From positions 124,001 through 188,000 of the IMG/VR virus record IMGVR_UViG_3300046516_001816: 64,000 nt of DNA. One strand, 5' to 3'. Position numbers and translations under genes: made by a program. The notes under the pieces were generated by a model, which was not told the DNA's origin, did not search any database, and saw only the letters and a list, made by a program, of their open reading frames with translations. Each line of letters starts with the position of its first letter. Position 1 is the stretch's first letter. Below are positions 19,831 through 51,200 of the stretch, piece by piece.

Positions 19831-20322
19831 ATGCAGCAGCACGGTAACGTTTTAGCGTACTATCGCGAAACCGATTTCATGAGCCACATGTATCGGTGCG
19901 AGTTTTACTATCGTGACATTCTGTTTAACCATGTCGAAAAATTTATCATGTACGGCAAAGCCATGGCCTTTCATGATTCCGACACGGCGCAGAAGATCAT
20001 TGACAACGACAGCCCCTACGAGTGTAAGACGCTCGGCAAGGCAGTCAAAGGTTTTGATCAAGGCATTTGGCAGTCGCAGTGGGCACCGCGGGTCGCCTAC
20101 GTGGGCAACCGCGAGAAGTATCGGCAGAACCCGAACCTCGCGGACTTGCTCAAGCAAACCGAGGCGCTGATTCTGGCCGAAGGCAGTTGGAACAAAGTGT
20201 GGGGCGCAGGCTTTGCGAAAGATGATCCCCGCATCGGTGAAGTCCATTTATGGCCAGGTGCAAACTTGGCCGGTAACACCTTGATGCGAGTCCGTAAAGA
20301 ACTCTTGACGGGTCTCTACTAA
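19831..20322 (+). CDS. NADAR (YbiA/DUF1768) family protein
   Basis: FMSHMY, VEKFIMYGKAMAF.D, KTLGKAVKGFD..IW, LKQT...LAEGS..KVWG.G, G.NLAG..LM.VR. Confidence 0.9.
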   Translation: MQQHGNVLAYYRETDFMSHMYRCEFYYRDILFNHVEKFIMYGKAMAFHDSDTAQKIIDNDSPYECKTLGKAVKGFDQGIWQSQWAPRVAYVGNREKYRQNPNLADLLKQTEALILAEGSWNKVWGAGFAKDDPRIGEVHLWPGANLAGNTLMRVRKELLTGLY

Positions 20323-20331
20323 ACCCCGAAA

Positions 20332-20361
20332 GGGGACGCCTAGGAAGCGTCCTCTTTTTTT
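20332..20361 (+). terminator. Intrinsic terminator
   Basis: GGGGACGC / GCGTCCTC stem followed by T7. Confidence 0.75.
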
Positions 20362-20382: not shown

Positions 20383-21384
20383 ATGACAACTGATAACAAA
20401 AGCGCACTGGACATCGTTCACGGCCTGAGCGATGCTCACGAGGGTTCGATCATGCAGAACCGCCGGGCAGCTGAAAAGCGCATTCATGCGCACTACTACA
20501 CGGTCCACGATCGCTTCCATACGCTGCATGCGGAGAAGGCTAAGCGCGAACAAGAACAGACGAACGCCGCGAACGCCGGTTTCGTGCAACAAGTGGCCGT
20601 GTGGAAGGGTACGCTTGTCACGCCGTTCCAGCAGCCGGTTGCGAAGGTCGAGATGGGGTTCACCGCCCAGCGAATCGAGGAGGTCCTTCCGTGCCAGATC
20701 CAGGAAGAGACGGCGCCCCTCACGGGCTTCAAGAAGCGTTGGGCTGTGCTCATGCAGCTCGCGGGTCTGTTGAACGAATACACGGACCTGCTCAATGAAG
20801 AAGACGCCGAAGATCCGTCGGACCATGTGCAGGAAGGTCGCCGCGTCGCTCAGATGTTCGCCATCGCTGCGCTGGAAACCGCGCATGCCGCCGGCCTGGA
20901 TCTCGACATCGAACGTCGTCCGGTTGGTCACGCAATGGGGAGCTTCGTCTCAGCGATCATCATCGGTGAAACCAACAAGGTCTACCGCGCGCGGTTTGCC
21001 GCAGAAGCCGAAGCGAAGCACGCGCAGGCTGAACAAGAAGATCGAACGGCCATGGGTGAGCCGGACTGCACGTGTGCGAGCAATCCGCACGCCGAGAATT
21101 GCCCGGTGACTTACTTTGTGCGTGAACTCTTCGCGAACTCGGGCGAGTGTGCGCAAGCGCTCGTCGAGGAAGGCTCCAGCATTCCGTTCGGTGTGCTCGA
21201 TGAACTGCCGGCGGCGATCAACCCGTGTACGGAAACGCCGGCGATGTTGGCCAAGCGGATCGTGCTGGGCAAAGACGCTGAGCAGATCATCGTGCCGCAG
21301 GAGCCGTTTACGGAACCGGTGGCCATGGGTCATCCGTACCTGCCGTATCCGAGCAAAGAAGAAACGATGTACATCCCGGTGTAA
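20383..21384 (+). CDS. Hypothetical protein (333 aa)
   Basis: Long ORF, helical N-terminus; CTCASNPHAENC Cys/His cluster. Confidence 0.75.
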   Translation: MTTDNKSALDIVHGLSDAHEGSIMQNRRAAEKRIHAHYYTVHDRFHTLHAEKAKREQEQTNAANAGFVQQVAVWKGTLVTPFQQPVAKVEMGFTAQRIEEVLPCQIQEETAPLTGFKKRWAVLMQLAGLLNEYTDLLNEEDAEDPSDHVQEGRRVAQMFAIAALETAHAAGLDLDIERRPVGHAMGSFVSAIIIGETNKVYRARFAAEAEAKHAQAEQEDRTAMGEPDCTCASNPHAENCPVTYFVRELFANSGECAQALVEEGSSIPFGVLDELPAAINPCTETPAMLAKRIVLGKDAEQIIVPQEPFTEPVAMGHPYLPYPSKEETMYIPV

Positions 21385-21418
21385 GTGACCGGATCATACA
21401 GACCAAAAGGAAAGTAAA

Positions 21419-22540
21419 GTGAAGCGTCTTATTGCAGTGCTGGCTGTGCTGACCAGCTTCTCGGCCCACGCGAATCTCGTGGTGAAGATCGGGCACTCGG
21501 TGCCGCTGACTGGGGAGTCGGCGAATATGGGTAAGGACGACCAGAACGGGGGCGTGCTGGCCATCGAGGAGTTGAACAAGCAGGGCATTACCGTCAAGGG
21601 GCAAGCCGTGACGTTCGTGCTCGACTCGGAAGACAACGCCGCGGATCCGCGTACCGGCACGATGGTCGCACAAAAGCTCGTGGACTCCGGTGTGGTGGCG
21701 GTGATCGACGGTCAGCTCTCGTCGGTGGCGATTCCGGCCGCGTCGATTTACAAAGCCGCTGGCATTCCGCAGATTGCCAATGCTGCGTCCAACCCCGAGC
21801 TTACCAAGCTGGGGATTCAGTCGGTGTTCCGCATTGTGGGGACCGACGATCAGCAAGGACCCGCGTTGGCGCAGTACGCGATCAAGACGCTTCACTACAA
21901 GACCTTCGCCGTGCAGGACGATCAGACGGCGTATGGTCACGGACTAGCGGAGGCATTTGCCAGTGAGGTTACGAAACAAGGTGGCCGGGTGGTGTATCGC
22001 GGGGGCAATAGCAACAAGCAAGTCGACTTCAAGGCTATGCTTACCACGATCAAAGGCAAGAACCCCGACGCAATTTTCTACGCCGGGGAAGAAGCCACCA
22101 CGGCCCCCCTCTTTAAGCAAGCGATCGCGCTTGGACTCCAGTCCCAGTTTCTTACCGGTGACTCGGGTTGTGTGGACGAACTTGCCAAGCTCACAGGCAC
22201 TGCGGCTACGGATCGCCTTACCTGCGCAGAACCTGACACTGCTTTTTCTCTCATACCCCGGGGCACGGAGTTTGAGAAAGCGTACCGTACCCGTTTCCGT
22301 CAGTCCATTGTGGACTATGCGCCCTACACGTACGACGCGATCATGCTGATTGCGGATGCCATCAAGCGCGCGGACTCGACGACGCCCAGCGATATCACGC
22401 AGGCCTTGAAAGCGGCGAACTACGAAGGCATCACCGCCACAATGCAGTTCGATCCGTTCGGGGATCTGAAGCATCCGGTCGTCAGTATTTCGAAGTTTGT
22501 GAACGGGGTGAAGACACCGTTTCAGATTGTGAAGCCGTAA
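21419..22540 (+). CDS. Branched-chain amino-acid ABC transporter substrate-binding protein (LivK/LivJ/BraC-like), orphan
   Basis: Sec signal MKRLIAVLAVLTSFSAHA; VKIGH..PLTG..A..GKD..NG..LAIEELN, D.AADP, TDDQQGP, DDQTAYG.GLA, DF..MLT.IK..NPD, YAPYTYDA, FD..GDLK. Confidence 0.92.
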   Translation: MKRLIAVLAVLTSFSAHANLVVKIGHSVPLTGESANMGKDDQNGGVLAIEELNKQGITVKGQAVTFVLDSEDNAADPRTGTMVAQKLVDSGVVAVIDGQLSSVAIPAASIYKAAGIPQIANAASNPELTKLGIQSVFRIVGTDDQQGPALAQYAIKTLHYKTFAVQDDQTAYGHGLAEAFASEVTKQGGRVVYRGGNSNKQVDFKAMLTTIKGKNPDAIFYAGEEATTAPLFKQAIALGLQSQFLTGDSGCVDELAKLTGTAATDRLTCAEPDTAFSLIPRGTEFEKAYRTRFRQSIVDYAPYTYDAIMLIADAIKRADSTTPSDITQALKAANYEGITATMQFDPFGDLKHPVVSISKFVNGVKTPFQIVKP

Positions 22541-22547
22541 AGGAATC

Positions 22548-23129
22548 ATGAACAAGAAAAAGACTATCCTGTTTTTCACGGGGATCGGTCTCATGACCTG
22601 TGTCGGGCTGACGCTGATCATCAGCTCGTGCAGTCACGACGAGGCCGATATTCAACCGGTGCAGCAACAACCGGTGCAAGCGCAGTCAGCCTCGCAGACA
22701 CCAGCGCCTCAGATCATCGAGCGTGAGCGGATCGTGGAGCGCCACCACAGCGGGATCAATAGTTTCTTGCTGTGGCACTATCTATTTAGTCAGTCGAGCC
22801 CGACCCACACGGTGGAGTATCGTCCTGCGCCGCTGTATCATCCGCAGGCTCCGTCGACGGTCGTGCAGCAGAACGTCACTAACGTGACGGTGAACAAAAC
22901 GGTGAATGTCAATGCCAATGCTCCCTCTGCTTCTGCTGATTCTTCTAGTGGCAGTCCTGCGCGCCCGGTGGTATCGGCCCCGGCAAAGTCGTGGTGGGCC
23001 ACCCCCACGCAAGTCATGAAGGCGTCGACGGCTTACCCGAAGGCGCAAAATACCAATACGGGGAGCTACGCGGCGAAAACCGCCAGCTACTCCGGCTATA
23101 AACAAACTGTGAAGATAGGGAGAAGGTAA
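22548..23129 (+). CDS. Putative lipoprotein with low-complexity Ser/Pro/Ala tail
   Basis: Basic N-terminus, hydrophobic stretch, lipobox-like ISSC. Confidence 0.6.
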   Translation: MNKKKTILFFTGIGLMTCVGLTLIISSCSHDEADIQPVQQQPVQAQSASQTPAPQIIERERIVERHHSGINSFLLWHYLFSQSSPTHTVEYRPAPLYHPQAPSTVVQQNVTNVTVNKTVNVNANAPSASADSSSGSPARPVVSAPAKSWWATPTQVMKASTAYPKAQNTNTGSYAAKTASYSGYKQTVKIGRR

Positions 23130-24061
23130 TGGACAAGGTCCTGTGTGTCTATCACAAAGACTGCATTGACGGTTACGCGGCGGCCTGGGTGGTCGGGCAC
23201 GCGTGTGGCTTTGAGAACGTGGAGTTCGTCGCGGCGAACTACGGCGATGCGCTGCCAGTGTTGGAAGGCCGGGAAGTCTATATCGTCGATTTCAGCTACG
23301 ATCCGGCTGAGCTCTCCACCGATGACTTGAAGCAGATGGCGAAAGCCAAGCGCCTGGTCATGCTCGATCACCACGAGACGGCCTACGCGAACTGGAAAGA
23401 TGTCCCGTTGCTGGATCACTGGACTTTCCGTTACGAACCTGCGATGTCTGGGGTTGGGGTGGCATGGCGCTGGTTCTTTGGCGGCAACAAAGCGATGCCC
23501 ATGCCCTTGCAGTTGATTCAGGATCGCGACCTGTGGCAGTTCCAGCTGGAAGGCAGTCGCGAGTTTCATGCGGTGGCAGTGTCCTATGGACTCCTGCGAG
23601 AAGCGCCGACCGAGCACGGCTGGCTGGGTCAGCTGATCGAGGACACACCGTTCTGGTTGAATGGGCCGCCTTCGGATATTATCATGATCCAGGGCAAGGC
23701 GATCATTCGGGATCAGAAGAATCTGATTCAGACACTCTTGCAGCGCGCGCATCTGGTGAGCTGCCGGGGCTATGAAGTGCCGCTGTGTCAGGTGCCTTAC
23801 GACATGCGCTCGGACGCGGGCTTCTGGTTAAGCCTCAAGTATCCGTTCTCGATTACCTACGACGATGTCTGGTCCGATGGCGTGCGCAAGTATTCGTTTC
23901 GCTCGAACAAGAAGACCGGTATCGACGTGATGAAAGTCACGCAACCCTGGGGCGGCGGTGGTCACAAGCACGCCTCGGGCTTTACGGTACCGATTGATCT
24001 GCCGTTCCCTTTTCTTGCAGTGCAGGGACGTCAGTTGAAGCTGGATTTTGAAGACAAGTAA
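23129..24061 (+). CDS. DHH/DHHA1 phosphoesterase (NrnB/nanoRNase-like)
   Basis: YHKDCIDG, IVDFS, LDHHET, DRDLW, GGGGHKHASGF. Confidence 0.9.
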   Translation: MDKVLCVYHKDCIDGYAAAWVVGHACGFENVEFVAANYGDALPVLEGREVYIVDFSYDPAELSTDDLKQMAKAKRLVMLDHHETAYANWKDVPLLDHWTFRYEPAMSGVGVAWRWFFGGNKAMPMPLQLIQDRDLWQFQLEGSREFHAVAVSYGLLREAPTEHGWLGQLIEDTPFWLNGPPSDIIMIQGKAIIRDQKNLIQTLLQRAHLVSCRGYEVPLCQVPYDMRSDAGFWLSLKYPFSITYDDVWSDGVRKYSFRSNKKTGIDVMKVTQPWGGGGHKHASGFTVPIDLPFPFLAVQGRQLKLDFEDK

Positions 24062-38985: not shown

Positions 38986-41900
38986 ATGAGCGACTTGTCA
39001 AAGAAGTTAGAGGACGAACTGAGCTTGCTGCTGGACTCGATTTCGGGTCTGACAGGCGCAATTGAAACGGTCAGTACCGGCACGACCGGCGAGACGCTTC
39101 AGCAACTCGTGGACACTGCGACCACGCAAGCCAATGACTCCGCCACCAGTGCTGCGCAAGCGGCGACGATTCAACTTGAAATCCAGAACAGTATTCTGGC
39201 CGCGCAAACGGCTGACCTGAATGCCGCGACGGGTGCAGCGAATGCAGCGATCGCCGCTAGTAACTCGTTGACCTATTCGCAAAACGCGGGTAACAGTGCG
39301 ACAGCCGCTGCTGGTAGTGCCACAGCGGCTGCCACGAGTGCCACCTCGGCGGCGTCGGCAGCGACGTCGGCCAACAACGCCGCGAACAATGCCATTGCGT
39401 TGGCTTCGTCGTGGGCGAGTGTCTGGTTGGGTCAACACACGGCCGATCCGACGCTGGATAACAGCGGTGGGGCCTTGATCAGTGGTGCGATGTACATGAA
39501 CACCACGACCACGCCTCCGCACCTGCGGATCTATTTGAATGGTGCGTGGCAAGATCAGGATGCTGATGCGATTGCTGCAACGCAGGCAGCCCAAGCTTCC
39601 GCAACGCAAGCCTCGATGAGTGCATCGACTGCTAGCACGCAAGCCACGAACGCAGCTGCCTCAGCCACGGCTGCGGCCAATAGCGCAACTGCTGCGGCTA
39701 CCAGCGAGACCAATGCGGCGGCTTCCGCAACGTCCGCTGCCAGCAGTGCGAGTAACATTGCAGGTCAGATTGCAGCAGCCACCACCCAAGCTGGTAACGC
39801 CAGCGGAAGTGCCACGAACGCAGCCACAAGCGCCAGTGCGGCTGCTGCCAGTGCGACGGCAGCGGCCGGTTCGGCCAGCGATGCAGCCACAAGCGCTACC
39901 GGTGCAGGCACGCAGGCCAGTGCAGCAGCGTCCTCAGCAACGGCTTCGAGTAATTCAGCGAATGCTGCGAATACATCGGCTTCGAGCGCAGCCGGGTCGG
40001 CTACTGATGCTGCAACATCTGCCACGAACGCCAGCAATAGCGCAACCGCCGCGGCTTCGTCGGCAAGTGATGCTTCGTCCAGTGCGGGAATTGCCACTAC
40101 GAAGGCAGGGGTAGCGACGACGCAAGCGGGCAACGCTTCGACTTCTGCTAGCAATGCTGCGACGTCTGCTTCTGCGGCAGCGGGTTCAGCCACGGCCGCA
40201 GGGACATCCGCTACCAACGCAGCTAATTCCGCGAGCGCAGCGGCCGCGAGTGCTTCGGATGCGGATACTCAAGCTGCGACGGCAGCGACCCAAGCAACCA
40301 ATGCCGGTACGTCCGCCACCGCGGCCGCAGGCAGCGCAACCGCTGCGGCTACGTCAGCGACGAATGCAGGTAACTCGGCGACAGCAGCGGCTGCTTCTCA
40401 GAGCGCTGCCCACACGAGTGAACTGAATGCAGCGACGTCGGCCACCACGGCAGGAACGCAAGCGACCAATGCTTCGGGAAGTGCTACCGCAGCAGCAGCG
40501 TCTGCTACGGCTGCTGCTACCAGCGAAACGAATGCGGGTAATAGCGCGAGCGCAGCAGCAGGTTCGGCGACAGCGGCCGCAGGGTCCGCCAGTGCAGCAA
40601 GTACGTCAGCTGGCAATGCGGCGGCGTCTGCCACCACAGCAACGAACGCAGCGAATGCAGCCACGGCGTTGTATCACTCATGGGGTCAGATGTGGTTGGG
40701 TGAATTCACGACCAACCCGACGCAGGACAATCAAGGCGGTGCACTGGTTAGTGGTGCGCAGTATTTGAATACGTCCACCACGCCTCCTCAGGTGATGATC
40801 TACCTGAATGGCGCATGGGGTCCGTTGGATGCGGATGCGCAAGCGGCTACGCAAGCGGCACAGACCTCGGCTTCACAAGCTGCTGCGAGTGCGACGACTG
40901 CAAGTAATCAGGCGAGCACCGCGACGACGCAAGCGGGTAATGCGAGCACATCTGCGACGAATGCAGCCAACTCCGCCACCGCCGCAGCGGGCAGTGCGTC
41001 AGCTGCGTCGACGTCGGCGGGCAATGCAAGTAGTAGTGCTACAGCCGCCGCGGGTAGTGCGACTGCGGCCAGCGGTTCGGCCACGACGGCTTCAACCCAA
41101 GCTACAAACGCCGGTAACTCGGCTACTGCTGCTGCGGGTTCTGCAACCGCCGCGAGTACGTCCGCCACCAATGCTAGCACCAGTGCGACTACCGCACAGA
41201 ACTGGGCCTCCCAGGGTAGTGGGACGGTGGATGGAACGAGTTATTCAGCGAAGTACTACGCTAACCAGGCGGGTATCAGCGCAACGAATGCAGCGAGCTC
41301 GGCCTCGGCCGCAGCCACCTCTGAAACTAATGCAGCGGCTTCGGCCACAACTGCCTCCAATCAAGCAACCACGGCAACCACTCAAGCCGGCAATGCCAGT
41401 AGTTCGGCCTCTGCTGCGAGTACGAGTGCGACCAATGCGGCAAGTTCCGCTACGGCCGCGTCCGGGTCTGCAACAACTGCGAGTACCCAAGCCACGAATG
41501 CGTCTAACAGCGCAACGCTGGCTCAGAATTGGGCTTCTCAACCGTCCGGTGTGGTCGGCGGCACGAGTAGTTATTCTGCGGTGTACTATGCCAATCAAGC
41601 CAGCGCTTCAGCCACGGCTGCATCGACCAGTGCGTCGAATGCTTCGGGCTCTGCTAGTGCGGCAGCGTCCTCAGCGACCGCGGCCAGCAATAGCGCAAGC
41701 GCGGCAGCAACCAACCAAACCAACTCAGCCAATAGCGCCACGAGTGCGTCAGGGAGTGCCGGCTCGGCTGCGACCAGTGCAACGAACGCGAGTAACTCCG
41801 CCACCGCTGCCTCGACGTCTGCGACGAACGCCAGTACCTCCGCGACCAATGCGGCGAACTCCGCCACGGCCGCCGCGACCTCGGCGACCAATGCTTCAAA

Positions 41901-44900
41901 CAGTGCCACGGCAGCCCAGACTGCGGCCACCACGGCGCAGAATGTCCAGATCGGTTTGAATACGATCACGACACTCAGCAAGACCGGTGGTACGTATTCA
42001 CTCACGACAGCCGAATACAACAACGGCATCATCATTGTCAATGGGACGCTCACCAGTCCCCTGATTCTGGTGGTCCCGGCGACCTCGCATCCGTTCATTC
42101 TGGACAATGCCACGACGGGTGCCTACTCGCTGACGGTGAAGATGACGGGTGGTTCGGCGCAAGTCACGGTCGCTCAGGGCAACTCGAACCAGTTGTTCTG
42201 TGATGGTAGCACGGGCGTGTATTCTGTCTCGTCCGTGTCCGGTCTGCAATTCAACGCAGTCAAGGCCATCAGCAGCGCAACCAATGCGCTGACGAACCTG
42301 TACCAGGGTGCGTACACGCCGATGAGCAACGGCGGTGGCACGACCTATGCTGTCACCTTGCCGCAAGGCTCGACGATGGGTGTAGGCGGGGCGGTGTTCC
42401 TCGATGCGATCTCGGGCAAATGGAGTGTGGCTCCGTACAGTGGCGACACGGCGGACTTCGGTGCTTCGTTTGCGATGGGTCCGGTCGACAAAGCCATGTT
42501 TACGTGGAATGGCTCGAGCTGGCGTACGACGTTGTATTCCAACCAGGCCTCCCCGGTATTCAGTCAGTCGCTGACGGTACCGGTTGCGTATATCACCGGT
42601 CGTGCGGTGATAGGTGGGGTGACGGACGACGGCACGACAGCAGTGCAAGCTACGTCGGGACGCTTTACGTCGAGCCTGACGGTCCCGACGATGACGGCTG
42701 GGGACAACAGCCTGAACGCTGCGAACACGGCCTATGTGGTCACGGCGATCAACAACCTGATTGGCGGAGCACCGTCGGCCCTGAACACGCTGAAGGAACT
42801 GGCGGACGCAATCAATGATGACGCGAGCTATGCCGCGAGTATCACAACGCAGCTGGGCACGAAAGCCTCCCTGTCGGGCGCAAACTTCACGGGTGCGGTG
42901 ACGGCTACGGCACTGACCTCGACCACAGGGGTGGTGAATGCTTACGGCTACAGCGGCAGCAATAGCAAGGGCGTGATCTATTTCACCCAGGACGGCACGC
43001 GTTACCTGTACTACGATGGTTCGCAATACAATCTGCCGGGGGCTTCGCTCCTGATCAACGGCAGTGCGGCATGGACGGCGGCGACGTTTAATCCGGCGAA
43101 CTATGCAGCGCTGGCAGGTGCAGCGGCCTTTGGCGGAGCAGTCACCGGCACAGCGGCGACCTATGCGCTCAGAGCCACCAACGGAGCAGGCACAGGCCAG
43201 ACCACCATCGGCCTGAATGCCGTGGGTGCCGCAACCGATGCGAAGAACTGGGAAGTGATCATGGGCTCGGACCAGTCCTTCGGGATTCGGACGATCAATG
43301 ATGCTTACTCGGCGTCTAACTACGCGTTGCAGGTGTATCGCTCAGGCTATGCGATTACCACCATGCGCATCATGGGCAGTGGCGGTCGGACGTTGATCGG
43401 CACGGGTACACAGGTGTCGGATGACGGCGCCACCAACGTACAGGTGGGTGCAGGTCTGCGGGTGCAGCGTACGAGCTCCAGCGGGCAGGCGATCAGTTTG
43501 ATGCCGGCCCCGTTGAATACGGTCTCGGGCAGCAATCTGTCGGATAACTATATCACGTCGTACTCGGCCACGGGTAATGCCAAGTCGCTGGTGTTGAATG
43601 CGACCACGGATACGGCGGACACTGCATCGACAGCGGGTAACGTGTCGCTGATGCTTCAGGTCATGAGCACCACGGCGCTGGCGGTAACAAGCACGCGCAA
43701 CGTGATCATTGGATCGAGCACGGACGACGGCAGTGGCAATATCTTGCAGGTGCGGGGTGGACTGGGCATCATTGGGAACGGTAAGGGCATCACGTTCCCG
43801 GACGGTACGGTGCAGAACACGGCTTATTGCGTGACGGCCCCGACGGTGATGTCGTATACGCCAGCTAACGGGGTAAGTACGTTTAGCTGTCAGCCGTACG
43901 GTGTTGGTTTGGTGCAGGTGTTCGAAAACGGTGCGCTCATTACCGAGTACACCGCTACCACGGGCAACAGCATTACTCTTAACACCGCCGCCAATGGTCG
44001 CACGCAGTACACGGTGGTGAGTGGGGTGTTGTTCCAGGCCTCCAACGTGTTGCAGCCAGCTGTGTCAGTCGTCAATCCGACGGTGGGTACGACCACGCTG
44101 ACCTTGCCGGTGAGCACCCCAGTGGGCTATCTCTGGATCTTCCAGGGTGGGGCATGGCTGGTGCCGGGTCAGGACTTTACGTTCAATGGTGGTACGTCGG
44201 TGACCTTGACCGCTGCCACGACTCAGTCGTCGGATTCGTTCACGCTGGTAATGTTGCAGCCGGTGTCGTTTGCCAATACGGCGACGCAGTCCAACGTGCA
44301 AGCCGCACAGCTCACCTTTGCGGCGGACACAGGGGTCGCGAACGCTTATGCGGTCGCCTACATTCCGGCGGTGAGTACGCCGACCAACGGCATGCAGTTG
44401 TCGTTCTTTGCGAATGTGGCTAACACGGGCGCCTCGACACTGACCTGTAATGGCGGGACGGCTTATCCGATCTACGGCAATGGTCATGCAGCCTTGACAG
44501 GTGGCGAAATTGTTGCCAACGGTTTCGTGGAAGTGACCTTCAGTTCGGTGCTGGGTGGCTGGATCTTGATGGAGTGTACAGGGGGCTCGCAGCAGATCGC
44601 GAAGAACCTCAACTTCGCCGGCACGGGTAATCGCATTACGGGGGATTTGAGTAATGCAACGGTCGCGAACCGCCTGCTGGTCCAGTCCTCGACGGTAAAC
44701 GGCAACAGTGTGTTGGGGATTGTGCCTAATGGGACCTCGACGACTTCCGCCATAAACGTCTACGGCGGCTCGGATCTGGTGAACTACTCGCTGGGTCAGA
44801 TGGCAAATTACGGTACCGACCTTCGTTTTCAAGCCGTACAGGCTGGTACAGGTAGCTACCTACCGCTGACGTTTTACACGAGCGGCGCGGAACGCATGCG

Positions 44901-45579
44901 CGTCACACCGGCGGGTCTCGTAGGCATCAATGCTACGGGTCCCAGTATCGCCGGCACCCGACTGATGGTGAAAGCCACTGCTGCCGAATGGCCAGCGGAA
45001 ATTGCCAACACCAACACCAACGGCGTAGCAGGCGGGCTGTTGCTGATGCAGGTGTTTCAGACGAACTCGCAGTATGTGCAGTTCTTCTACGGCGCGGGTA
45101 CCATCGTGGGTTCTATTACCACCAATGGTTCGTCGACGGCGTATGGTACAACGTCGGACTATCGCCTGAAGGAAAACGTCAAGCCGTTGCAAGGTGCGCT
45201 CCAACGCGTCATGCAAGCCAAGCCCATTCGGTATAACTTTAAGACTGATGAGACCAAGACGCAAGTCGATGGTTTCCTCGCTCACGAGTTGGCGGAAGTC
45301 ATTCCGGAAGCCGTAGTGGGTGAGAAGGACAAGGTGACGTACCGGCCGGTACTGCGTGAAGGCCATGATCCGAAGGACATTCATCCCCACGACGTGTTGG
45401 ATCTGGAAGAGCACGTCGAGGCTCAGATCGTAGATCATTCGAAGATGGTGCCGTTGTTGACCGCCGCCTTGCAAGAGGCGAATGTTGAGATCGAGCAGCT
45501 CAAGAAGGATCGGGACATTCTGCGCAAGCAGATGGATGAGATGATGCAGCAGATGAAACTGCTGATGCAAAAGCACTAA
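38986..45579 (+). CDS. Long tail fibre (2197 aa): coiled-coil shaft, 2 knob domains, collar motifs, C-terminal peptidase S74 intramolecular chaperone
   Basis: Heptads to ~aa 985; APSALNTLKELADAIN.D..YA collar; DTGVANAY module; TSDYRLKENV...GFLAHEL..VIPEAV (S74). Confidence 0.92.
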   Translation: MSDLSKKLEDELSLLLDSISGLTGAIETVSTGTTGETLQQLVDTATTQANDSATSAAQAATIQLEIQNSILAAQTADLNAATGAANAAIAASNSLTYSQNAGNSATAAAGSATAAATSATSAASAATSANNAANNAIALASSWASVWLGQHTADPTLDNSGGALISGAMYMNTTTTPPHLRIYLNGAWQDQDADAIAATQAAQASATQASMSASTASTQATNAAASATAAANSATAAATSETNAAASATSAASSASNIAGQIAAATTQAGNASGSATNAATSASAAAASATAAAGSASDAATSATGAGTQASAAASSATASSNSANAANTSASSAAGSATDAATSATNASNSATAAASSASDASSSAGIATTKAGVATTQAGNASTSASNAATSASAAAGSATAAGTSATNAANSASAAAASASDADTQAATAATQATNAGTSATAAAGSATAAATSATNAGNSATAAAASQSAAHTSELNAATSATTAGTQATNASGSATAAAASATAAATSETNAGNSASAAAGSATAAAGSASAASTSAGNAAASATTATNAANAATALYHSWGQMWLGEFTTNPTQDNQGGALVSGAQYLNTSTTPPQVMIYLNGAWGPLDADAQAATQAAQTSASQAAASATTASNQASTATTQAGNASTSATNAANSATAAAGSASAASTSAGNASSSATAAAGSATAASGSATTASTQATNAGNSATAAAGSATAASTSATNASTSATTAQNWASQGSGTVDGTSYSAKYYANQAGISATNAASSASAAATSETNAAASATTASNQATTATTQAGNASSSASAASTSATNAASSATAASGSATTASTQATNASNSATLAQNWASQPSGVVGGTSSYSAVYYANQASASATAASTSASNASGSASAAASSATAASNSASAAATNQTNSANSATSASGSAGSAATSATNASNSATAASTSATNASTSATNAANSATAAATSATNASNSATAAQTAATTAQNVQIGLNTITTLSKTGGTYSLTTAEYNNGIIIVNGTLTSPLILVVPATSHPFILDNATTGAYSLTVKMTGGSAQVTVAQGNSNQLFCDGSTGVYSVSSVSGLQFNAVKAISSATNALTNLYQGAYTPMSNGGGTTYAVTLPQGSTMGVGGAVFLDAISGKWSVAPYSGDTADFGASFAMGPVDKAMFTWNGSSWRTTLYSNQASPVFSQSLTVPVAYITGRAVIGGVTDDGTTAVQATSGRFTSSLTVPTMTAGDNSLNAANTAYVVTAINNLIGGAPSALNTLKELADAINDDASYAASITTQLGTKASLSGANFTGAVTATALTSTTGVVNAYGYSGSNSKGVIYFTQDGTRYLYYDGSQYNLPGASLLINGSAAWTAATFNPANYAALAGAAAFGGAVTGTAATYALRATNGAGTGQTTIGLNAVGAATDAKNWEVIMGSDQSFGIRTINDAYSASNYALQVYRSGYAITTMRIMGSGGRTLIGTGTQVSDDGATNVQVGAGLRVQRTSSSGQAISLMPAPLNTVSGSNLSDNYITSYSATGNAKSLVLNATTDTADTASTAGNVSLMLQVMSTTALAVTSTRNVIIGSSTDDGSGNILQVRGGLGIIGNGKGITFPDGTVQNTAYCVTAPTVMSYTPANGVSTFSCQPYGVGLVQVFENGALITEYTATTGNSITLNTAANGRTQYTVVSGVLFQASNVLQPAVSVVNPTVGTTTLTLPVSTPVGYLWIFQGGAWLVPGQDFTFNGGTSVTLTAATTQSSDSFTLVMLQPVSFANTATQSNVQAAQLTFAADTGVANAYAVAYIPAVSTPTNGMQLSFFANVANTGASTLTCNGGTAYPIYGNGHAALTGGEIVANGFVEVTFSSVLGGWILMECTGGSQQIAKNLNFAGTGNRITGDLSNATVANRLLVQSSTVNGNSVLGIVPNGTSTTSAINVYGGSDLVNYSLGQMANYGTDLRFQAVQAGTGSYLPLTFYTSGAERMRVTPAGLVGINATGPSIAGTRLMVKATAAEWPAEIANTNTNGVAGGLLLMQVFQTNSQYVQFFYGAGTIVGSITTNGSSTAYGTTSDYRLKENVKPLQGALQRVMQAKPIRYNFKTDETKTQVDGFLAHELAEVIPEAVVGEKDKVTYRPVLREGHDPKDIHPHDVLDLEEHVEAQIVDHSKMVPLLTAALQEANVEIEQLKKDRDILRKQMDEMMQQMKLLMQKH

Positions 45580-48295: not shown

Positions 48296-51200
48296 ATGAC
48301 CGGCAATGTAGATCATCTTACTCACCTCAAGGGTGAAGTGGAACAGCTGGTAGATACGGTGGATGGTCTGGGGGTTGCGTTTAACTTGGCCACGGGTGGA
48401 GACATTGCTGTCTATGCCCAGCAAGCACTCGCAAATGCCGGTCAGGCTCAGACGGCATCAGCAGCCGCGTCCCAGTCCGCTACTACAGCTACTGCCGCTG
48501 CCACACAAACGGCACAAGACGTGATCAACGCCAATGCGGCGGCGACACAGGCCGCGGCTTCCGCAGGCAATGCCGCACAGTCGGCATCGACCGCGGTATC
48601 AGCACAACTCTCGGCGAGCTCCAGCGCAAGCGCAGCATCCAACTCGGCCATTGCCGCGGCGAACTCGGCTTCGACCATGGCCGCATCAGTAACCGCCGCA
48701 GGCAACAGCGCAGCGGCTGCTCACACCAGCGAAACCAATGCCGCGACTTCGGCTAGCGCTGCGCAGTCATCCGCAGCTCAGGTTACGGCGCTGTATAACG
48801 CCTGGGGTCAAGTCTTCCTGGGTGAATTCCCGTCAGATCCCACGCTGGATAATCAAGGCAATGCGCTCATCGATGGCGCGATGTATTTGAACACCACCGA
48901 AGTCCCGCCTGCGATCCGAATCTATACGGCGGGTAAGTGGCAGGACATGGATGAACAGGGCGTGCTGGCATCACAAGCCGCGCAGACTTCGGCTCAGCAA
49001 GCCGCCACGTCGTCCAGTGCAGCCCAGACCTTTGCCGGTACCGCAGCCACCAACGCGGCGGCTGCTAGCACGTCAGCTAATGCAGCAGCGACTTCGGCTA
49101 CGACAGCGTCTGATCTTGCCGGACAAGCAGCGACGTCCGCGACCAATGCGTCTGATTCGGAAATCGCGGCCGCGTCCAGCGCTACGGAAGCAGATGCAGC
49201 GGCAGCGTTGGCGCAAGACTGGGCTTCTAAGTCAGACGGTACGGTGGGTGGGACGGAATTCTTTTCGGCTGCTCACTATGCGCAGGAGGCGGATGCAGCG
49301 AACACCGCGGTGCAAAGCTCGATCTCCAATGCAGCTGCTTTGGGTGGAGCAGCTGCTACGTCGGCCACGCAAGCTGCATCCAGTGCAACTGCGGCTGCTA
49401 CGTCGGCTTCGCAGGCTTCGGGTTCGGCGACAGCCGCCGGTGTCAGTGCAGGTAATGCTGCTAACAGCGCTGCGGCGGCGCAGGCTTCTCAATCGGCAGC
49501 CGCGACCAGTGAAACCAATGCAGCGACGAGTGCGACGCATGCGGCTACCTCCGAAACGAATGCTGCGGCCAGTGCAACGTCGGCCAGTGCAGCGGACACG
49601 GATGCCAAAGCGCAAGCGACCAGTGCCACGACGGCTGCGCAATTGGCAGAAGACTGGGCGACGAAGACGAGTGCCACAGTAGACGGGGTGGAGTATTCGG
49701 CCAAGTACTACGCGAACCAAGCTGTAGCAGCAGACACGGATGCTCAGGCAAAGGCTGCTACGGCTGCAACGTCAGCGACCACCGCTACGACACAAGCCAC
49801 CAATGCTACCAGCAGCGCCACCTTGGCTCAGCAATGGGCAACGAGTGCAACGCTGGTGGCATCGACTGATTATTCGGCGAAGTATTACGCCAATGCAGCA
49901 GGTTCGTCGGCGACTGCCGCTGCAAACAGTGCGTCCTCGATTGCCGCGACGGCCACGGCTGTTGCAGCGAATGCCGCGCTGGCCGCCGCGTGGGCGTCGC
50001 AAGAATCGGGTACGGTGAATGGGACCACGTATTACTCGGCACTGTACTACGCGCTTCAAGCAGCGAATGCCGATACGGATGCTCAAACGCAGGCCACCAA
50101 TGCAGCGACGAGTGCTACGGCAGCTGCCTCCAGCGCTACAAATGCCGCAACATCGGCAAGCAGTCTTCAAAGTGCACTGGCTTCGTTTAGTGCATTGTTC
50201 CTGGGCCCTCATTCCACTCCGCCGACCGTAGACAACCAAGGCAACCCGTTGATCACCGGTGCGCAGTACATGGATTCGTCACAGAGTCCGCCGGTACTGA
50301 ATGAATGGACGGGCTCGGCTTGGGTGGCTGTCTCCAACGATGCTTCGGGCAACGCTCAACTTGCGGCGACTCAAGCGCAGGCGGCAGCGACTTCGGCATC
50401 AGGGAGTGCATCGGCGGCTTCGACGAGCGAATCGAATGCAAGTACTTCCGCCACTAATGCAGCAAATTCTGCAACTGCTGCTGCATCTTCCGCTTCTGCC
50501 AGTGCTGGTAGTGCTACTGCTGCTCAAACGGCTGCTAGCGCCGCACAAGCCGCTGACACGGATGCGACAACGCAAGCAACTAATGCGGGAGCATCTGCAA
50601 CAAGCGCAGCAGGCAGTGCAAGTGCAGCAGGAACTTCAGCAGGTCAGGCAACTGATGCAGCAGCACTTGCTCAAGCTTGGGCAAGCCAGGCAAGCGGAAA
50701 TGTAAACGGTACCGCGTTTGCGTCGGCATTGCAGTATGCGCAACAGGCTTCTAGCTCGGCCACCAGTGCGAGCACGGCAGTAACGCAGTCGCAAGCCAAT
50801 GCAACCCTGGCTCAATCGTGGGCCTCGCAGACCTCGGGTAAGGTCAATAGCAGCAACTATTACTCGGCGTATTACTACGCGACGCAGGCCGCGACGAGTG
50901 CTACTGCCGCTGGCACGAGTGCGACCACAGCTAGCACCGCAGCCACCTCCGCTACAGCGAGTCAAACCGCTGCGGCGACGTCCGCCACCAACGCCGCAGG
51001 CAGCGCGACGACGGCACAAACCGCCGCCACGACGGCGACGAATCAAGCAGCAGCAGCGAGTGCTTCGGCAAGTGCAGCAGCTGCTAGTGATACGGATGCG
51101 ACCACTCAGGCGAGTAATGCAGCAGCCTCGGCAACCACGGCCAGTAATGCCGCGACAACCGCCAGCGCTGCGGCGACCACCGCTACCACACAGGCGACTG

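What the first reader, a model, noticed from the sequence alone, without database searches (positions are those of the whole stretch)
21419..22540. Orphan host-derived LivK-like periplasmic binding protein with an altered pocket
Seen: full-length secreted SBP with no permease or ATPase gene nearby. Relative to Burkholderia-type homologs as I recall them (VVGHLNSG, SPSATNP, YGG, GDG), the ligand-contact segments read IDGQLSS, ANAASNP, YAGEE and GDSG. Inference: the phage captured a host SBP and changed its specificity. Possible roles are boosting uptake through the host Liv permease, sequestering an amino-acid or signal ligand, jamming a periplasmic sensor, or blocking a receptor pathway (superinfection exclusion).
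Basis: partly seen in the sequence, partly recalled or inferred. Interest (0 to 1): 0.6.

Follow-up and report, generated by a model that had tools for sequence, protein, structure and literature searches.

The report
Jumbo-phage amino-acid binding protein, retuned pocket
A 285-kb uncultured jumbo phage carries an intact, secreted amino-acid-type binding protein captured long ago from Burkholderia-like bacteria; related phages keep it under strong selection, and it probably plugs into the host's own amino-acid transporter, much as cyanophage PstS does for phosphate.

Summary
Window 21419-22540 (+) encodes a 373-aa Peripla_BP_6 binding protein (SBP) with a Sec-type signal peptide. It lies in a 284,983-bp virus record that has no HAAT permease and no ABC ATPase above cut-off.

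- **Origin:** 18 phage-type SBPs from at least three uncultured jumbo-phage lineages form one long-stemmed clade. Its sister is a Paraburkholderia subfamily that is itself orphan and sits beside a diaminopropionate ammonia-lyase.
- **Pocket:** the alpha-amino-acid anchor residues are kept. The side-chain-lining positions differ from LivJ/K. Some of these differences are shared with the bacterial sister subfamily and some are phage-specific.
- **Selection:** in the window's clade, 34 of 35 pocket-loop positions are invariant, against 58% elsewhere. dN/dS is 0.05-0.19. The SBP is the best conserved gene of its neighbourhood.
- **Docking:** a model places it in canonical two-lobe geometry on a Paraburkholderia LivH/LivM pair (score 0.66, best control 0.42).

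Best reading: an auxiliary uptake gene for a polar or cationic small amino acid, analogous to cyanophage PstS. Ligand, host and expression are untested. A sensing or exclusion role, perhaps with the adjacent lipoprotein, is not excluded. Interest is moderate.

The parts
20328..20358 (+). Terminator-like hairpin (12-bp stem, then a T run) that closes the upstream NADAR gene. The unit P0121-SBP-lipoprotein-DHH begins after it.
20383..21384 (+). 333-aa acidic protein of unknown function (P0121), the first gene of the unit. A gene of 304-404 aa occupies the same position in clade-A relatives, but tblastn found no similarity to it.
   Evidence: no Pfam, PHROG or NCBIfam hit
21407..21411 (+). Shine-Dalgarno-like AAGGA, 7 nt before the GTG start
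21419..22540 (+). SBP coding sequence: 373 aa plus stop, Peripla_BP_6 / HAAT-type periplasmic binding protein (P0001)
21419..21472 (+). Predicted Sec signal peptide, residues 1-18, with an A-H-A cleavage motif conserved across clade A
   Evidence: read from the sequence; no predictor run
21707..21724 (+). Pocket loop D97-G98-Q99-L100-S101-S102 (LivJ positions 75-80). S101 is the conserved anchor Ser79. G75D, H76G and E77Q are specific to clade A.
21776..21796 (+). Pocket loop A120-N-A-A-S124-N-P126 (LivJ positions 98-104). T102S is fixed in all phage copies.
22079..22093 (+). Loop Y221-A-G-E224-E225 (LivJ positions 199-203). E at position 202 replaces the LivJ Tyr. G200A and D203E are fixed in all phage copies.
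22157..22168 (+). Loop G247-D248-S249-G250 (LivJ positions 225-228). D248 is the conserved acid that aligns to LivJ/K Glu226. G227S is fixed in all phage copies against G in 102 of 102 bacterial relatives.
22313..22318 (+). D299-Y300 (LivJ positions 275-276). Asp replaces a hydrophobic residue in all phage copies, next to the conserved pocket Tyr.
22548..23129 (+). 193-aa predicted lipoprotein (P0122): an I-S-S-C lipobox followed by a Q/P/S-rich region. It starts 8 nt after the SBP stop. It is conserved downstream of the SBP in clade-A relatives (36% identity) but absent from the P0014 contig.
23129..24061 (+). DHH-type phosphoesterase (phrog_4771), the last recognisable gene of the unit. A 61%-identical homolog follows the SBP on the P0014 contig.

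Best explanation
The gene is a phage auxiliary uptake gene. Steps 1 and 5 rest on direct results. Steps 2 to 4 are inferred.

1. **Shown: the protein is intact.** It is a complete HAAT-type (LivJ/LivK-like fold) solute-binding protein.
2. **Inferred from the signal peptide and an invariant Cys251/Cys269 pair: export.** During infection it is sent to the host periplasm by the Sec pathway.
3. **Inferred from conserved anchor residues: ligand class.** It closes around an alpha-amino-acid-type ligand held by Ser101, Ser124, Tyr172 and Asp248. The side-chain pocket is M37, Q99, L100, A123, E224 and Y300, with D97 and D299 nearby. That pocket suits a small polar or cationic amino acid better than Leu, Ile or Val. 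The nearest bacterial subfamily is genetically tied to a 2,3-diaminopropionate ammonia-lyase.
4. **Inferred, with support from a docking model: delivery.** The loaded protein docks one lobe on each membrane subunit of the host's own LivHM/BraDE-type permease. It thereby adds uptake capacity or a new substrate preference while the phage builds a 285-kb genome and its virions.
5. **Shown: origin.** The gene was captured once from a Burkholderiaceae-like bacterium. It then diversified within, and probably moved between, jumbo-phage lineages.
For: **Family and fold.** Pfam Peripla_BP_6 gives E = 4e-49. The AF2 model has pLDDT 90.8 and is in a closed form, with TM 0.87/0.93 to liganded Atu2422 structures 3ip5 and 3ipc.

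**Anchor residues.** Those aligned to LivJ Ser79, Thr102, Tyr150, Glu226 and Phe276 are S, S, Y, D and Y. They are invariant in clade A. The LivJ contact list comes from PMC6983066.

**Selection.**
- In clade A, 34 of 35 pocket-loop positions are invariant, against 179 of 308 elsewhere (p = 5e-7).
- Pairwise dN/dS within the phage clades is 0.05-0.19.
- The SBP is 71-76% identical among clade-A phages, while neighbouring genes are 26-64%.
- It is 56-58% identical between clades A and B. The only other detectable homologs there are 24-32% identical.

**Genome content.** The 285-kb genome has no permease and no ABC ATPase above cut-off.

**Bacterial relatives.** They are nearly all orphans that must share a permease encoded elsewhere. 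Only 1 of 21 loci has livH/livM within the fetched flanks.

**Docking model.** The mature SBP was modelled on Paraburkholderia fungorum LivH and LivM. The score was 0.66 and the best of 3 controls 0.42. That mark was reached by 51 of 78 solved complexes and 2 of 108 mismatched pairs. The runs agree in at least 95% of contacts and the partner's pLDDT is at least 74. Lobe 1 sits on LivM and lobe 2 on LivH.

**Precedent.** Cyanophage PstS integrates into the host PstCA transporter and raises phosphate uptake (bioRxiv 10.1101/2021.07.20.453049).
Against: - No ligand, expression or uptake data exist, and the host is unknown.
- No sequencing run was listed for the locus, and no close relative was found among cultured phages.
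- The docking pass used a proxy permease from a bacterium that is not shown to be the host. It used three chains, unlike the calibration. It may reflect family likeness only.
- The predicted interface is no better conserved than the rest of the protein: 57% against 48% identity to the bacterial consensus, p = 0.13. It also contains phage-specific replacements of residues invariant in bacteria (N197, Q201, E225, A229).
- The phage encodes no enzyme that would obviously use an imported diamino or other amino acid. It has no PALP enzyme, no Orn/Arg decarboxylase and no Asn synthase.
- A conserved lipoprotein gene next door hints at an envelope function other than nutrition.
Confidence: 0.5

Rival explanations
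1. Envelope module for exclusion or receptor masking. The secreted SBP, alone or with the adjacent lipoprotein, occupies or modifies a periplasmic or outer-membrane component. It might jam the permease or a receptor so that other phages, bacteriocins or a second copy of the same phage cannot use it.
For: A lipoprotein gene (lipobox I-S-S-C) starts 8 nt after the SBP stop. It is conserved behind the SBP in clade-A relatives L002, L005 and L064. Phage-specific replacements of residues invariant in bacteria fall in the predicted permease-facing surface, which could mean non-productive docking. From general knowledge, known exclusion proteins such as T5 Llp are periplasm-facing lipoproteins.
Against: The lipoprotein is missing from the P0014 contig and from clade-B phages, yet the SBP is kept there. 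The ligand-binding loops are frozen (34 of 35 invariant), which a pure blocker would not need. There is no PADLOC or PHROG exclusion-family hit.
Confidence: 0.17
2. Ligand sequestration or signal interference. The SBP binds a periplasmic amino-acid-like signal and either withholds it from a host sensor or presents it to an SBP-dependent chemoreceptor or sensor kinase. This would reprogram host behaviour without any transport.
For: The binding pocket is intact and strongly conserved. The phage has no transporter parts. SBP-dependent sensor kinases are documented in Pseudomonas (PMC11113362, abstract seen). The bacterial sister subfamily sits in a regulated catabolic trio with an Lrp/AsnC regulator.
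Against: No sensor partner is identifiable. Stoichiometric sequestration is costly. The docking model on LivH/LivM passes its controls. Both permease-facing helices keep many invariant residues (K39, D76, P77, T81, Q85, K200, D203, T209, K212, Q234).
Confidence: 0.15
3. Neutral passenger gene (moron) or decaying host fragment with no role for the phage.
For: No function has been shown. The gene sits at a point where downstream gene order varies between relatives.
Against: The frame is full-length in 18 variants. dN/dS is 0.05-0.19 and the gene is the best conserved in its region. It is retained in at least three phage lineages. Its GC content has adjusted to each phage, for example 51% in a 48% GC phage.
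Confidence: 0.04
4. The contig is bacterial or chimeric, and the SBP belongs to a bacterial chromosome whose transporter lies elsewhere.
For: The closest named homologs are bacterial.
Against: The record is a 285-kb virus record rated 100% complete by CheckV. Tail, tail-fibre and other phage genes lie on both sides on one strand. The same synteny appears on independent contigs from JGI, ENA and Logan samples. Identity to any bacterial protein is at most 51%.
Confidence: 0.01

Closest known systems
Cyanophage PstS (phosphate-binding protein of T4-like cyanophages such as P-SSM2)
   Same: A phage carries only the periplasmic binding component of an ABC importer and relies on the host's membrane and ATPase parts. 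The protein is host-derived, full-length and exported. For PstS, integration with host PstCA and higher uptake after infection were shown (bioRxiv 10.1101/2021.07.20.453049).
   Different: The SBP class and substrate differ (phosphate, not an amino acid). PstS keeps the host's specificity, whereas this clade has a derived pocket. The host and ecological driver are known for PstS (phosphorus limitation) and unknown here. Nothing has been tested experimentally here.
E. coli / Salmonella LivJ and LivK (high-affinity branched-chain amino-acid binding proteins)
   Same: The fold and family are shared (E = 1e-40 to 1e-37 to 1usg and 1z15). So are the anchor residues for the amino-acid backbone (Ser79, Thr/Ser102, Tyr150, acid at 226). 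Several SBPs share one LivHMGF permease.
   Different: Identity is only about 28-30%. NCBIfam PRK15404 scores 193 bits against a cut-off of 477. The hydrophobic side-chain pocket (Y/W18, L77, C78, Y202) reads M, Q, L, E here. This protein is not an ortholog.
Paraburkholderia orphan SBP subfamily next to diaminopropionate ammonia-lyase (P0019, P0022, L013)
   Same: It is the nearest bacterial relative (49-51% identity, sister clade with SH-aLRT 99). It is also encoded without a permease. It shares S80, M/L78, E202 and an acidic or polar residue at position 77.
   Different: The bacterial proteins carry S76-D77, T102, G200, G227 and a hydrophobic residue at 275. They sit in an AsnC - lyase - SBP trio in three species. 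The phage proteins carry H76-E77 or G76-Q77, S102, A200, S227 and D275. The phage has no such lyase.
Agrobacterium Atu2422 (binding protein for GABA and short-side-chain amino acids)
   Same: It is the best solved-structure match by sequence (E = 1e-41) and by fold (TM 0.87/0.93). It shows that the residue at position 77 governs side-chain selectivity in this family. That point rests on the F77A mutant entry 3ipc and on my own recollection of Planamente et al. 2010, a paper not held here.
   Different: Atu2422 has Phe at position 77. The phage protein has Gln there, or Glu in clade B. Identity is 29%. Atu2422 works with a known cognate Bra transporter.
'livK' entries in viral AMG catalogues from metagenomes
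   Same: LivK-type genes on viral contigs have been listed as auxiliary genes (PMC9948696).
   Different: That report is a one-line KEGG assignment with no phylogeny, pocket analysis or context, and it concerns viruses predicted to infect Gammaproteobacteria. No homolog above 33% identity exists in 50,697 GenBank phage records. The hits there are host-DNA fragments, mis-filed bacterial records or short gut contigs.

Membership tests
HAAT-type class I periplasmic solute-binding proteins (Pfam Peripla_BP_6, PF13458) | Profile match above the curated cut-off over the whole domain | tested here: met
   168.4 bits against a cut-off of 31.7, residues 22-346
HAAT-type class I periplasmic solute-binding proteins (Pfam Peripla_BP_6, PF13458) | Two-lobe Venus-flytrap fold with a hinge | tested here: met
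   AF2 pLDDT 90.8 and pTM 0.87. Foldseek TM 0.85-0.93 to liganded LivJ, LivK and Atu2422 structures
HAAT-type class I periplasmic solute-binding proteins (Pfam Peripla_BP_6, PF13458) | N-terminal export signal | tested here: met
   Residues 1-18 have K-R, a hydrophobic core and A-H-A, conserved in clade A. P0017 has an L-A-G-C lipobox instead. This was read from the sequence; no predictor was run.
HAAT-type class I periplasmic solute-binding proteins (Pfam Peripla_BP_6, PF13458) | Residues that hold the alpha-carboxylate and alpha-ammonium of an amino acid (LivJ Ser79, Thr102, Tyr150, Glu226) | tested here: met
   S101, S124, Y172 and D248, invariant in all 13 clade-A sequences
HAAT-type class I periplasmic solute-binding proteins (Pfam Peripla_BP_6, PF13458) | Actual ligand binding and delivery to a permease | not testable with these tools
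   Only a docking model is available: 0.66 against a best control of 0.42
LivJ/LivK high-affinity branched-chain amino-acid binding proteins (NCBIfam NF011933) | Score at or above the family cut-off | tested here: not met
   192.6 bits against a cut-off of 477
LivJ/LivK high-affinity branched-chain amino-acid binding proteins (NCBIfam NF011933) | Hydrophobic side-chain pocket (Y/W18, L77, C78, Y202, F/Y276) | tested here: not met
   The residues are M37, Q99, L100, E224 and Y300 (contact list from PMC6983066)
LivJ/LivK high-affinity branched-chain amino-acid binding proteins (NCBIfam NF011933) | Gene linked to livHMGF | tested here: not met
   No BPD_transp_2 family match and no ABC_tran above cut-off in the 285-kb genome
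Phage-borne SBP auxiliary genes (cyanophage PstS principle) | Encoded in a bona fide phage genome that lacks the rest of the transporter | tested here: met
Phage-borne SBP auxiliary genes (cyanophage PstS principle) | Kept intact under purifying selection in related phages | tested here: met
   dN/dS 0.05-0.19. 18 intact variants in at least 3 lineages. Pocket loops 34 of 35 invariant
Phage-borne SBP auxiliary genes (cyanophage PstS principle) | Host encodes a matching permease on which the phage protein docks | tested here: inconclusive
   The host is unknown. The proxy test on P. fungorum LivH/LivM passes (0.66 against 0.42). The predicted interface is not more conserved than the rest of the protein (p = 0.13).
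Phage-borne SBP auxiliary genes (cyanophage PstS principle) | Expressed during infection and raises uptake | not testable with these tools
   No sequencing run was listed and there is no cultured phage or host
Paraburkholderia diaminopropionate-lyase-linked SBP subfamily | Pocket signature V18, S76, D77, M78, T102, G227 and adjacency to AsnC plus diaminopropionate ammonia-lyase | tested here: not met
   The phage has M18, G76, Q77, L78, S102 and S227. No PALP enzyme is in the genome. It is a sister group, not a member.

The most novel reading that the evidence does not exclude
The phage clade may no longer be a nutrient-uptake protein. It may have been turned into a periplasmic sensor or blocker. 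It would bind a diamino-acid-like or cell-wall-derived ligand with its acid-rich pocket (E224, D248, D97, D299). Together with the co-conserved lipoprotein, it would report or alter the state of the host envelope, for example for superinfection exclusion or lysis timing. The phage-specific replacements on the permease-facing surface would then reflect a new partner.
Probability: 0.15. Interest if true: 0.7.

Novelty: new variant of a known kind. Interest (0 to 1): 0.42.

Why it matters
Phage-borne binding proteins that hijack host ABC importers are established only for phosphate (cyanophage PstS). This is a well-defined, selection-maintained clade of amino-acid-type binding proteins in soil-type (Burkholderiaceae-linked) jumbo phages, and its binding pocket has been re-tuned and then frozen.

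If it works as proposed, large phages manipulate host nitrogen or amino-acid acquisition, and not only phosphorus. A phage could also add a new substrate preference to a host transporter by supplying just one soluble part.

The clade also gives a natural series for studying how specificity evolves in this protein family, which is widely used for biosensors: canonical, then the Paraburkholderia sister, then phage clade B, then phage clade A. The link between the bacterial sister subfamily and diaminopropionate ammonia-lyase is a testable lead to a new ligand class for HAAT binding proteins.

Tried and rejected
**Searches that found nothing**
- Megablast of 8 kb around the gene against GenBank phages: no match.
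- tblastn of the tail-tube-like protein: no match.
- The baseplate-like 914-aa protein and the 2197-aa fibre gave only distant hits of 30-42% across many hosts, so no lineage or host could be assigned.
- Two IMG/VR scans, one with the single protein and one with the phage-clade alignment, found no relatives other than possibly withheld own records.
- The genome-contig scan found only Burkholderiaceae at 49% identity or less, plus distant Actinomycetota. No phage-type copy sits in any bacterial genome bin, so it gave no host clue.
- The look-up of sequencing runs: none was listed.
- PADLOC: no hit for the SBP, P0121, the lipoprotein or DHH.
- The Atu2422 structure paper (PMC2943279) is not held. 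Statements about Phe77 therefore rest on the PDB entry titles and on my own knowledge.

**Searches of the phage genome for a downstream enzyme**
- A PALP enzyme, an Orn/Arg decarboxylase and an Asn synthase were looked for. All are absent.

**Statistical tests that were inconclusive**
- Enrichment of phage-fixed changes in pocket loops: 5 of 18 changes fall in 17 of 131 conserved columns, p = 0.059.
- Extra conservation of the predicted permease-facing surface: 57% against 48%, p = 0.13.

**Ideas rejected**
- That the thioredoxin next to the clade-B SBP is a periplasmic folding partner. It has no signal peptide and looks like cytoplasmic TrxA.
- My first reading of the phmmer alignment, that the acid at LivK position 226 was lost. 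The MAFFT alignment shows D248 aligned to Glu226.

The large profile search (search of protein representatives) was not run. The word search and the family scans had settled the family, and no claim here rests on absence of relatives.
Full report
**What is there.** Window 21419-22540 (+) is an open frame of 373 codons. It starts at a GTG, with an AAGGA ribosome-binding site 7 nt upstream. Homologs start at the same place with M-K-R.
- Residues 1-18 (K-R, a hydrophobic core, then A-H-A before N19) look like a Sec signal peptide. I read this from the sequence and ran no predictor.
- The rest matches Pfam Peripla_BP_6 at 168 bits against a cut-off of 31.7.
- It matches the LivJ/LivK NCBIfam model at only 193 bits against a cut-off of 477.
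- The AlphaFold2 model built on 59 homologs is confident (pLDDT 90.8, pTM 0.87). It is a closed two-lobe binding protein. Its closest solved structures are liganded Atu2422, LivJ and LivK types, with TM up to 0.87/0.93.
- The closest sequence match among solved structures is Atu2422 at E = 1e-41, followed by LivK and LivJ.
- Two cysteines, C251 and C269, are invariant in all 59 aligned homologs. This fits a periplasmic disulfide.

**Is it really an orphan in a phage?** Yes.
- The window is bases 124001-188000 of a 284,983-bp virus record that CheckV rates 100% complete.
- That genome has one Peripla_BP_6 gene and no BPD_transp_2 permease. Its only ABC_tran signal is a sub-threshold 20.6-bit hit inside an 858-aa frame 130 kb away.
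- Genes on both sides lie on the same strand. They include a NADAR protein, a DHH phosphoesterase, tail-fibre proteins and a 914-aa tail protein (phrog_2871, E = 4e-219).
- The genome carries four tRNA genes.
- It has no close relative among 50,697 GenBank phage records.

- All four strings are present: IDGQLSS at residues 96-102, ANAASNP at 120-126, YAGEE at 221-225 and GDSG at 247-250.

**Relatives and origin.**
- The word search returned 13 metagenomic proteins at 64-83% identity and four at 55-58%. Bacterial proteins from Paraburkholderia, Trinickia, Caballeronia, Burkholderia and Cupriavidus follow at 51% or less.
- The 71-83% group is clade A (P0001-P0013). It lies on contigs of 37-327 kb. 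They repeat the window's upstream gene order: tail-tube-like protein, DUF3307, T4_Y16D, a 359-aa protein, NADAR, a 304-404-aa protein, then the SBP.
- P0014 (64%) lies on a 3.3-kb contig. There the SBP is followed by a small protein and a DHH phosphoesterase 61% identical to the window's. It therefore belongs to a relative of this phage.
- The 55-58% group is clade B (P0015-P0018). It lies in a different jumbo-phage context on contigs up to 327 kb: DUF8224, a DHFR/LysM-containing protein of 623-685 aa, the SBP, a thioredoxin and Peptidase_S80.
- In that clade-B neighbourhood, only the DHFR domain (31-32%) and the Peptidase_S80-like protein (24-30%) have detectable homologs in the window's genome. 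The SBP is 56-58% identical.
- A maximum-likelihood tree was built with IQ-TREE (quick search, LG+C20) on 63 rows, with Salmonella LivJ and LivK as outgroup. It puts all 18 phage-type proteins in one clade (SH-aLRT 100) on a stem of 0.72 substitutions per site.
- That clade is sister (SH-aLRT 99) to a Paraburkholderia group (P0019, P0020, P0022, P0026, P0028). The whole is nested among Burkholderiaceae SBPs.
- A scan of one genome per prokaryotic species found nothing closer than 49% identity, all of it Burkholderiaceae.
- The gene's GC and GC3 follow each phage's own composition, for example a 51% GC gene in a 48% GC locus.
- I conclude there was one old capture from a Burkholderiaceae-like donor, followed by long residence in phages. 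The contrast between SBP identity and the identity of other shared genes suggests later movement between phage lineages. Unusually strong constraint could also explain it.

**The pocket.** I aligned the family to Salmonella LivJ and LivK (taken from locus L007) and used mature LivJ numbering. The contact list comes from PMC6983066: Tyr18, Leu77, Cys78, Ser79, Ala100, Ala101, Thr102, Ala103, Tyr150, Tyr202 and Phe276. Glu226 is added from my own knowledge of the LivJ and LivK structures.
- The residues that hold the amino-acid backbone are kept: S101, S124 (a Thr-to-Ser change), Y172, D248 and Y300. My first impression from the phmmer alignment, that the acid was lost, was wrong. D248 aligns to Glu226.
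- The side-chain-lining positions are not those of LivJ/K: M37 for Y/W18, Q99 for L77, L100 for C78 and E224 for Y202.
- The changes come in steps:

| Group | Positions 75-80 | Around 100-104 | Around 199-208 | Around 225-230 |
|---|---|---|---|---|
| Canonical Burkholderiaceae | G-H-[L/I]-N-S-G | S-P-S-A-T-N-P | Y-G-G-[M/S]-D | G-D-G |
| Paraburkholderia sister | G-S-D-M-S-S | G-A-T at 100-102 | E at 202 | G-D-G |
| Phage clade B and P0014 | G-H-E-M-S-S | S102 | A200, E203 | S227; D275 |
| Phage clade A | D-G-Q-L-S-S | A100, S102 | A200, E203 | S227, G228; D275 |

- So part of the 'altered pocket' is shared with a non-canonical bacterial subfamily and was probably inherited from it. Part is common to all phage copies, and part is specific to the window's clade.

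**How unusual are the pocket changes?**
- 131 columns are at least 95% conserved in 102 bacterial relatives. Of these, 18 are replaced and fixed in clade A.
- Five of the 18 fall in the 17 conserved columns that lie in the six pocket-forming loops. The odds ratio is 3.2 and the one-sided p is 0.059.
- The pocket is therefore only weakly over-represented among the changes. The whole protein has diverged.

**Is the new pocket maintained?** Yes, and strongly.
- Within clade A, 34 of 35 pocket-loop positions are invariant, against 179 of 308 elsewhere (p = 5e-7).
- Pairwise dN/dS within the phage clades is 0.05-0.19, with synonymous sites near saturation.
- The SBP is 71-76% identical among clade-A phages, while flanking genes are 26-64%.
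- A decaying or neutral passenger is thus excluded. Ligand binding is very likely still the selected property.

**A clue to the ligand class.**
- In three Paraburkholderia species, the sister SBP sits in a conserved trio within otherwise different surroundings. The trio is an Lrp/AsnC-type regulator, a divergently transcribed 408-411-aa PLP enzyme and the SBP.
- The PLP enzyme scores 500 bits on the diaminopropionate ammonia-lyase equivalog, against a cut-off of 276.
- That association, together with D77 and E202, suggests the sister subfamily binds 2,3-diaminopropionate or a similar small polar or cationic amino acid. This is an inference.
- The phage proteins keep E202 and carry E77 or Q77. 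They add D275 in all phage copies, and D75 in clade A. A polar or cationic small amino acid is therefore more likely than Leu, Ile or Val.
- The phage genome encodes no PALP enzyme, no Orn/Arg decarboxylase and no Asn synthase. Any imported compound would feed host metabolism.

**Is 'orphan' meaningful?**
- I examined 21 Burkholderiaceae loci with flanks of up to 8 kb each side, some shorter. Only one (L019, P. fungorum) has livH/livM. There a canonical SBP-livHMGF operon lies 2.4 kb from the orphan paralog.
- Orphan SBPs that share a permease encoded elsewhere are therefore the rule in this family. That makes it plausible for a phage copy to use the host's permease.

**Docking test.**
- I modelled the mature phage SBP (residues 23-373) with P. 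fungorum LivH (3-308) and LivM (22-364). The termini were trimmed only to fit the size limit.
- The score was 0.66 and the best of three controls was 0.42. That mark was reached by 51 of 78 solved complexes and 2 of 108 mismatched pairs. The runs agree in at least 95% of contacts, and the partner's pLDDT is at least 74.
- Lobe 1 (helices 77-89 and 101-113) sits on LivM. Lobe 2 (helices 204-214 and 225-237) sits on LivH. This is the canonical geometry.
- Caveats:
  - The job had three chains, unlike the calibration.
  - P. fungorum is a proxy and not the known host.
  - A pass for a family member shows likeness, not that this copy binds.
- The predicted interface is 57% identical to the bacterial consensus, against 48% for the rest of the protein (p = 0.13).
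- The interface holds many invariant residues. It also holds phage-specific replacements of positions invariant in bacteria (N197, Q201, E225, A229). These could mean adaptation to a different host permease, or a different partner altogether.

**Neighbours.**
- A strong terminator-like hairpin at 20328-20358 precedes a unit of four genes: an unknown 333-aa protein, the SBP, a 193-aa predicted lipoprotein that starts 8 nt after the SBP stop, and a DHH phosphoesterase.
- The lipoprotein, with its conserved lipobox, follows the SBP in clade-A relatives. It is absent from the P0014 contig and from clade B.
- No family or defence-library hit explains the lipoprotein.

**Verdict.**
- The most likely function is an auxiliary uptake gene that works like cyanophage PstS, in a different SBP class and with a re-tuned, frozen pocket (confidence about 0.5).
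- An exclusion or blocking role (0.17) and a sequestration or signalling role (0.15) remain open.
- LivK-type genes have been listed in viral AMG catalogues (PMC9948696). I found no analysis of such a clade.
- GenBank phages hold no homolog above 33% identity. The hits there are host fragments, mis-filed bacterial records or short gut contigs.
- I rate it a new variant of a known kind, of moderate interest.

Noticed in passing
window 22548-23129 (+); also L002:7397-8023, L005:7411-7938, L064:11142-11753: A predicted lipoprotein (lipobox I/V-S/H/A-S/G-C) with a long Q/P/S-rich region lies directly downstream of the SBP. It is conserved at about 36% identity in clade-A relatives, has no family hit, and is absent from the P0014 contig and from clade B.
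   Followed up: partly
window 19831-20322 (+): A NADAR-domain protein scores Pfam 107 bits, NCBIfam ribofla_fusion N-glycosidase 94 bits (cut-off 73.7) and PADLOC candidate PDC-M42C at E = 2e-34. It is 63-64% identical in clade-A relatives. In a phage this may be a counter-defence enzyme that removes ADP-ribose marks.
   Followed up: no
P0002, P0010, P0011, P0012 (for example L005:6001-7146): Four clade-A variants carry a 25-35-residue hydrophobic, Ala/Ile/Pro-rich insert right after the A-H-A signal-peptidase motif and before the mature domain. It may be a tether or linker. The gene call for P0012 also seems to start too late and cuts off the signal peptide.
   Followed up: no
L009:5484-9146, L011:3836-7182, L013:5750-9116 (Paraburkholderia): A conserved trio of an Lrp/AsnC regulator, a diaminopropionate ammonia-lyase and an orphan HAAT SBP occurs in three species within differing surroundings. 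This suggests an uncharacterised diaminopropionate-type (or similar) uptake and catabolism module.
   Followed up: partly
window 38986-45579 (+) and 48296-54367 (+): Two giant ORFs of 2197 and 2023 aa. The C-terminal ~300 residues (1865-2174) of the first match tail-fibre or 'chaperone of endosialidase' regions of many unrelated phages at 30-42% identity. They are probably giant tail fibres.
   Followed up: partly
window 23129-24061 (+); L063:2533-3288: A DHH-family phosphoesterase (phrog_4771 at E = 1.5e-59; Pfam DHH only 19.8 bits, below cut-off) follows the SBP unit. It is 61% identical on the P0014 contig. Its substrate is unknown and could be a nucleotide second messenger.
   Followed up: no
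L006:3893-5950, L008:5911-7947, L010:3337-5208: Clade-B jumbo phages carry a 623-685-aa protein directly upstream of their SBP. It has an N-terminal dihydrofolate reductase domain, a long extension of unknown function and weak LysM signals. Only the DHFR part has a homolog in the window's genome (G000 C1:130095-130736).
   Followed up: no
G000 C1:215728-216781 (outside the window): A cluster of four tRNA genes (Tyr-GTA, Asn-GTT, Thr-CGT, Gln-TTG) in the phage genome.
   Followed up: no
phage collection records AFYI01000003.1, AGRM01000003.1, OR845870.1, OR845566.1: The 'phages' collection holds mis-filed Salmonella whole-genome shotgun contigs and 1.5-2 kb 'Escherichia phage' records that are simply host livJ/livK DNA. 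They can create false 'phage LivK' hits.
   Followed up: partly
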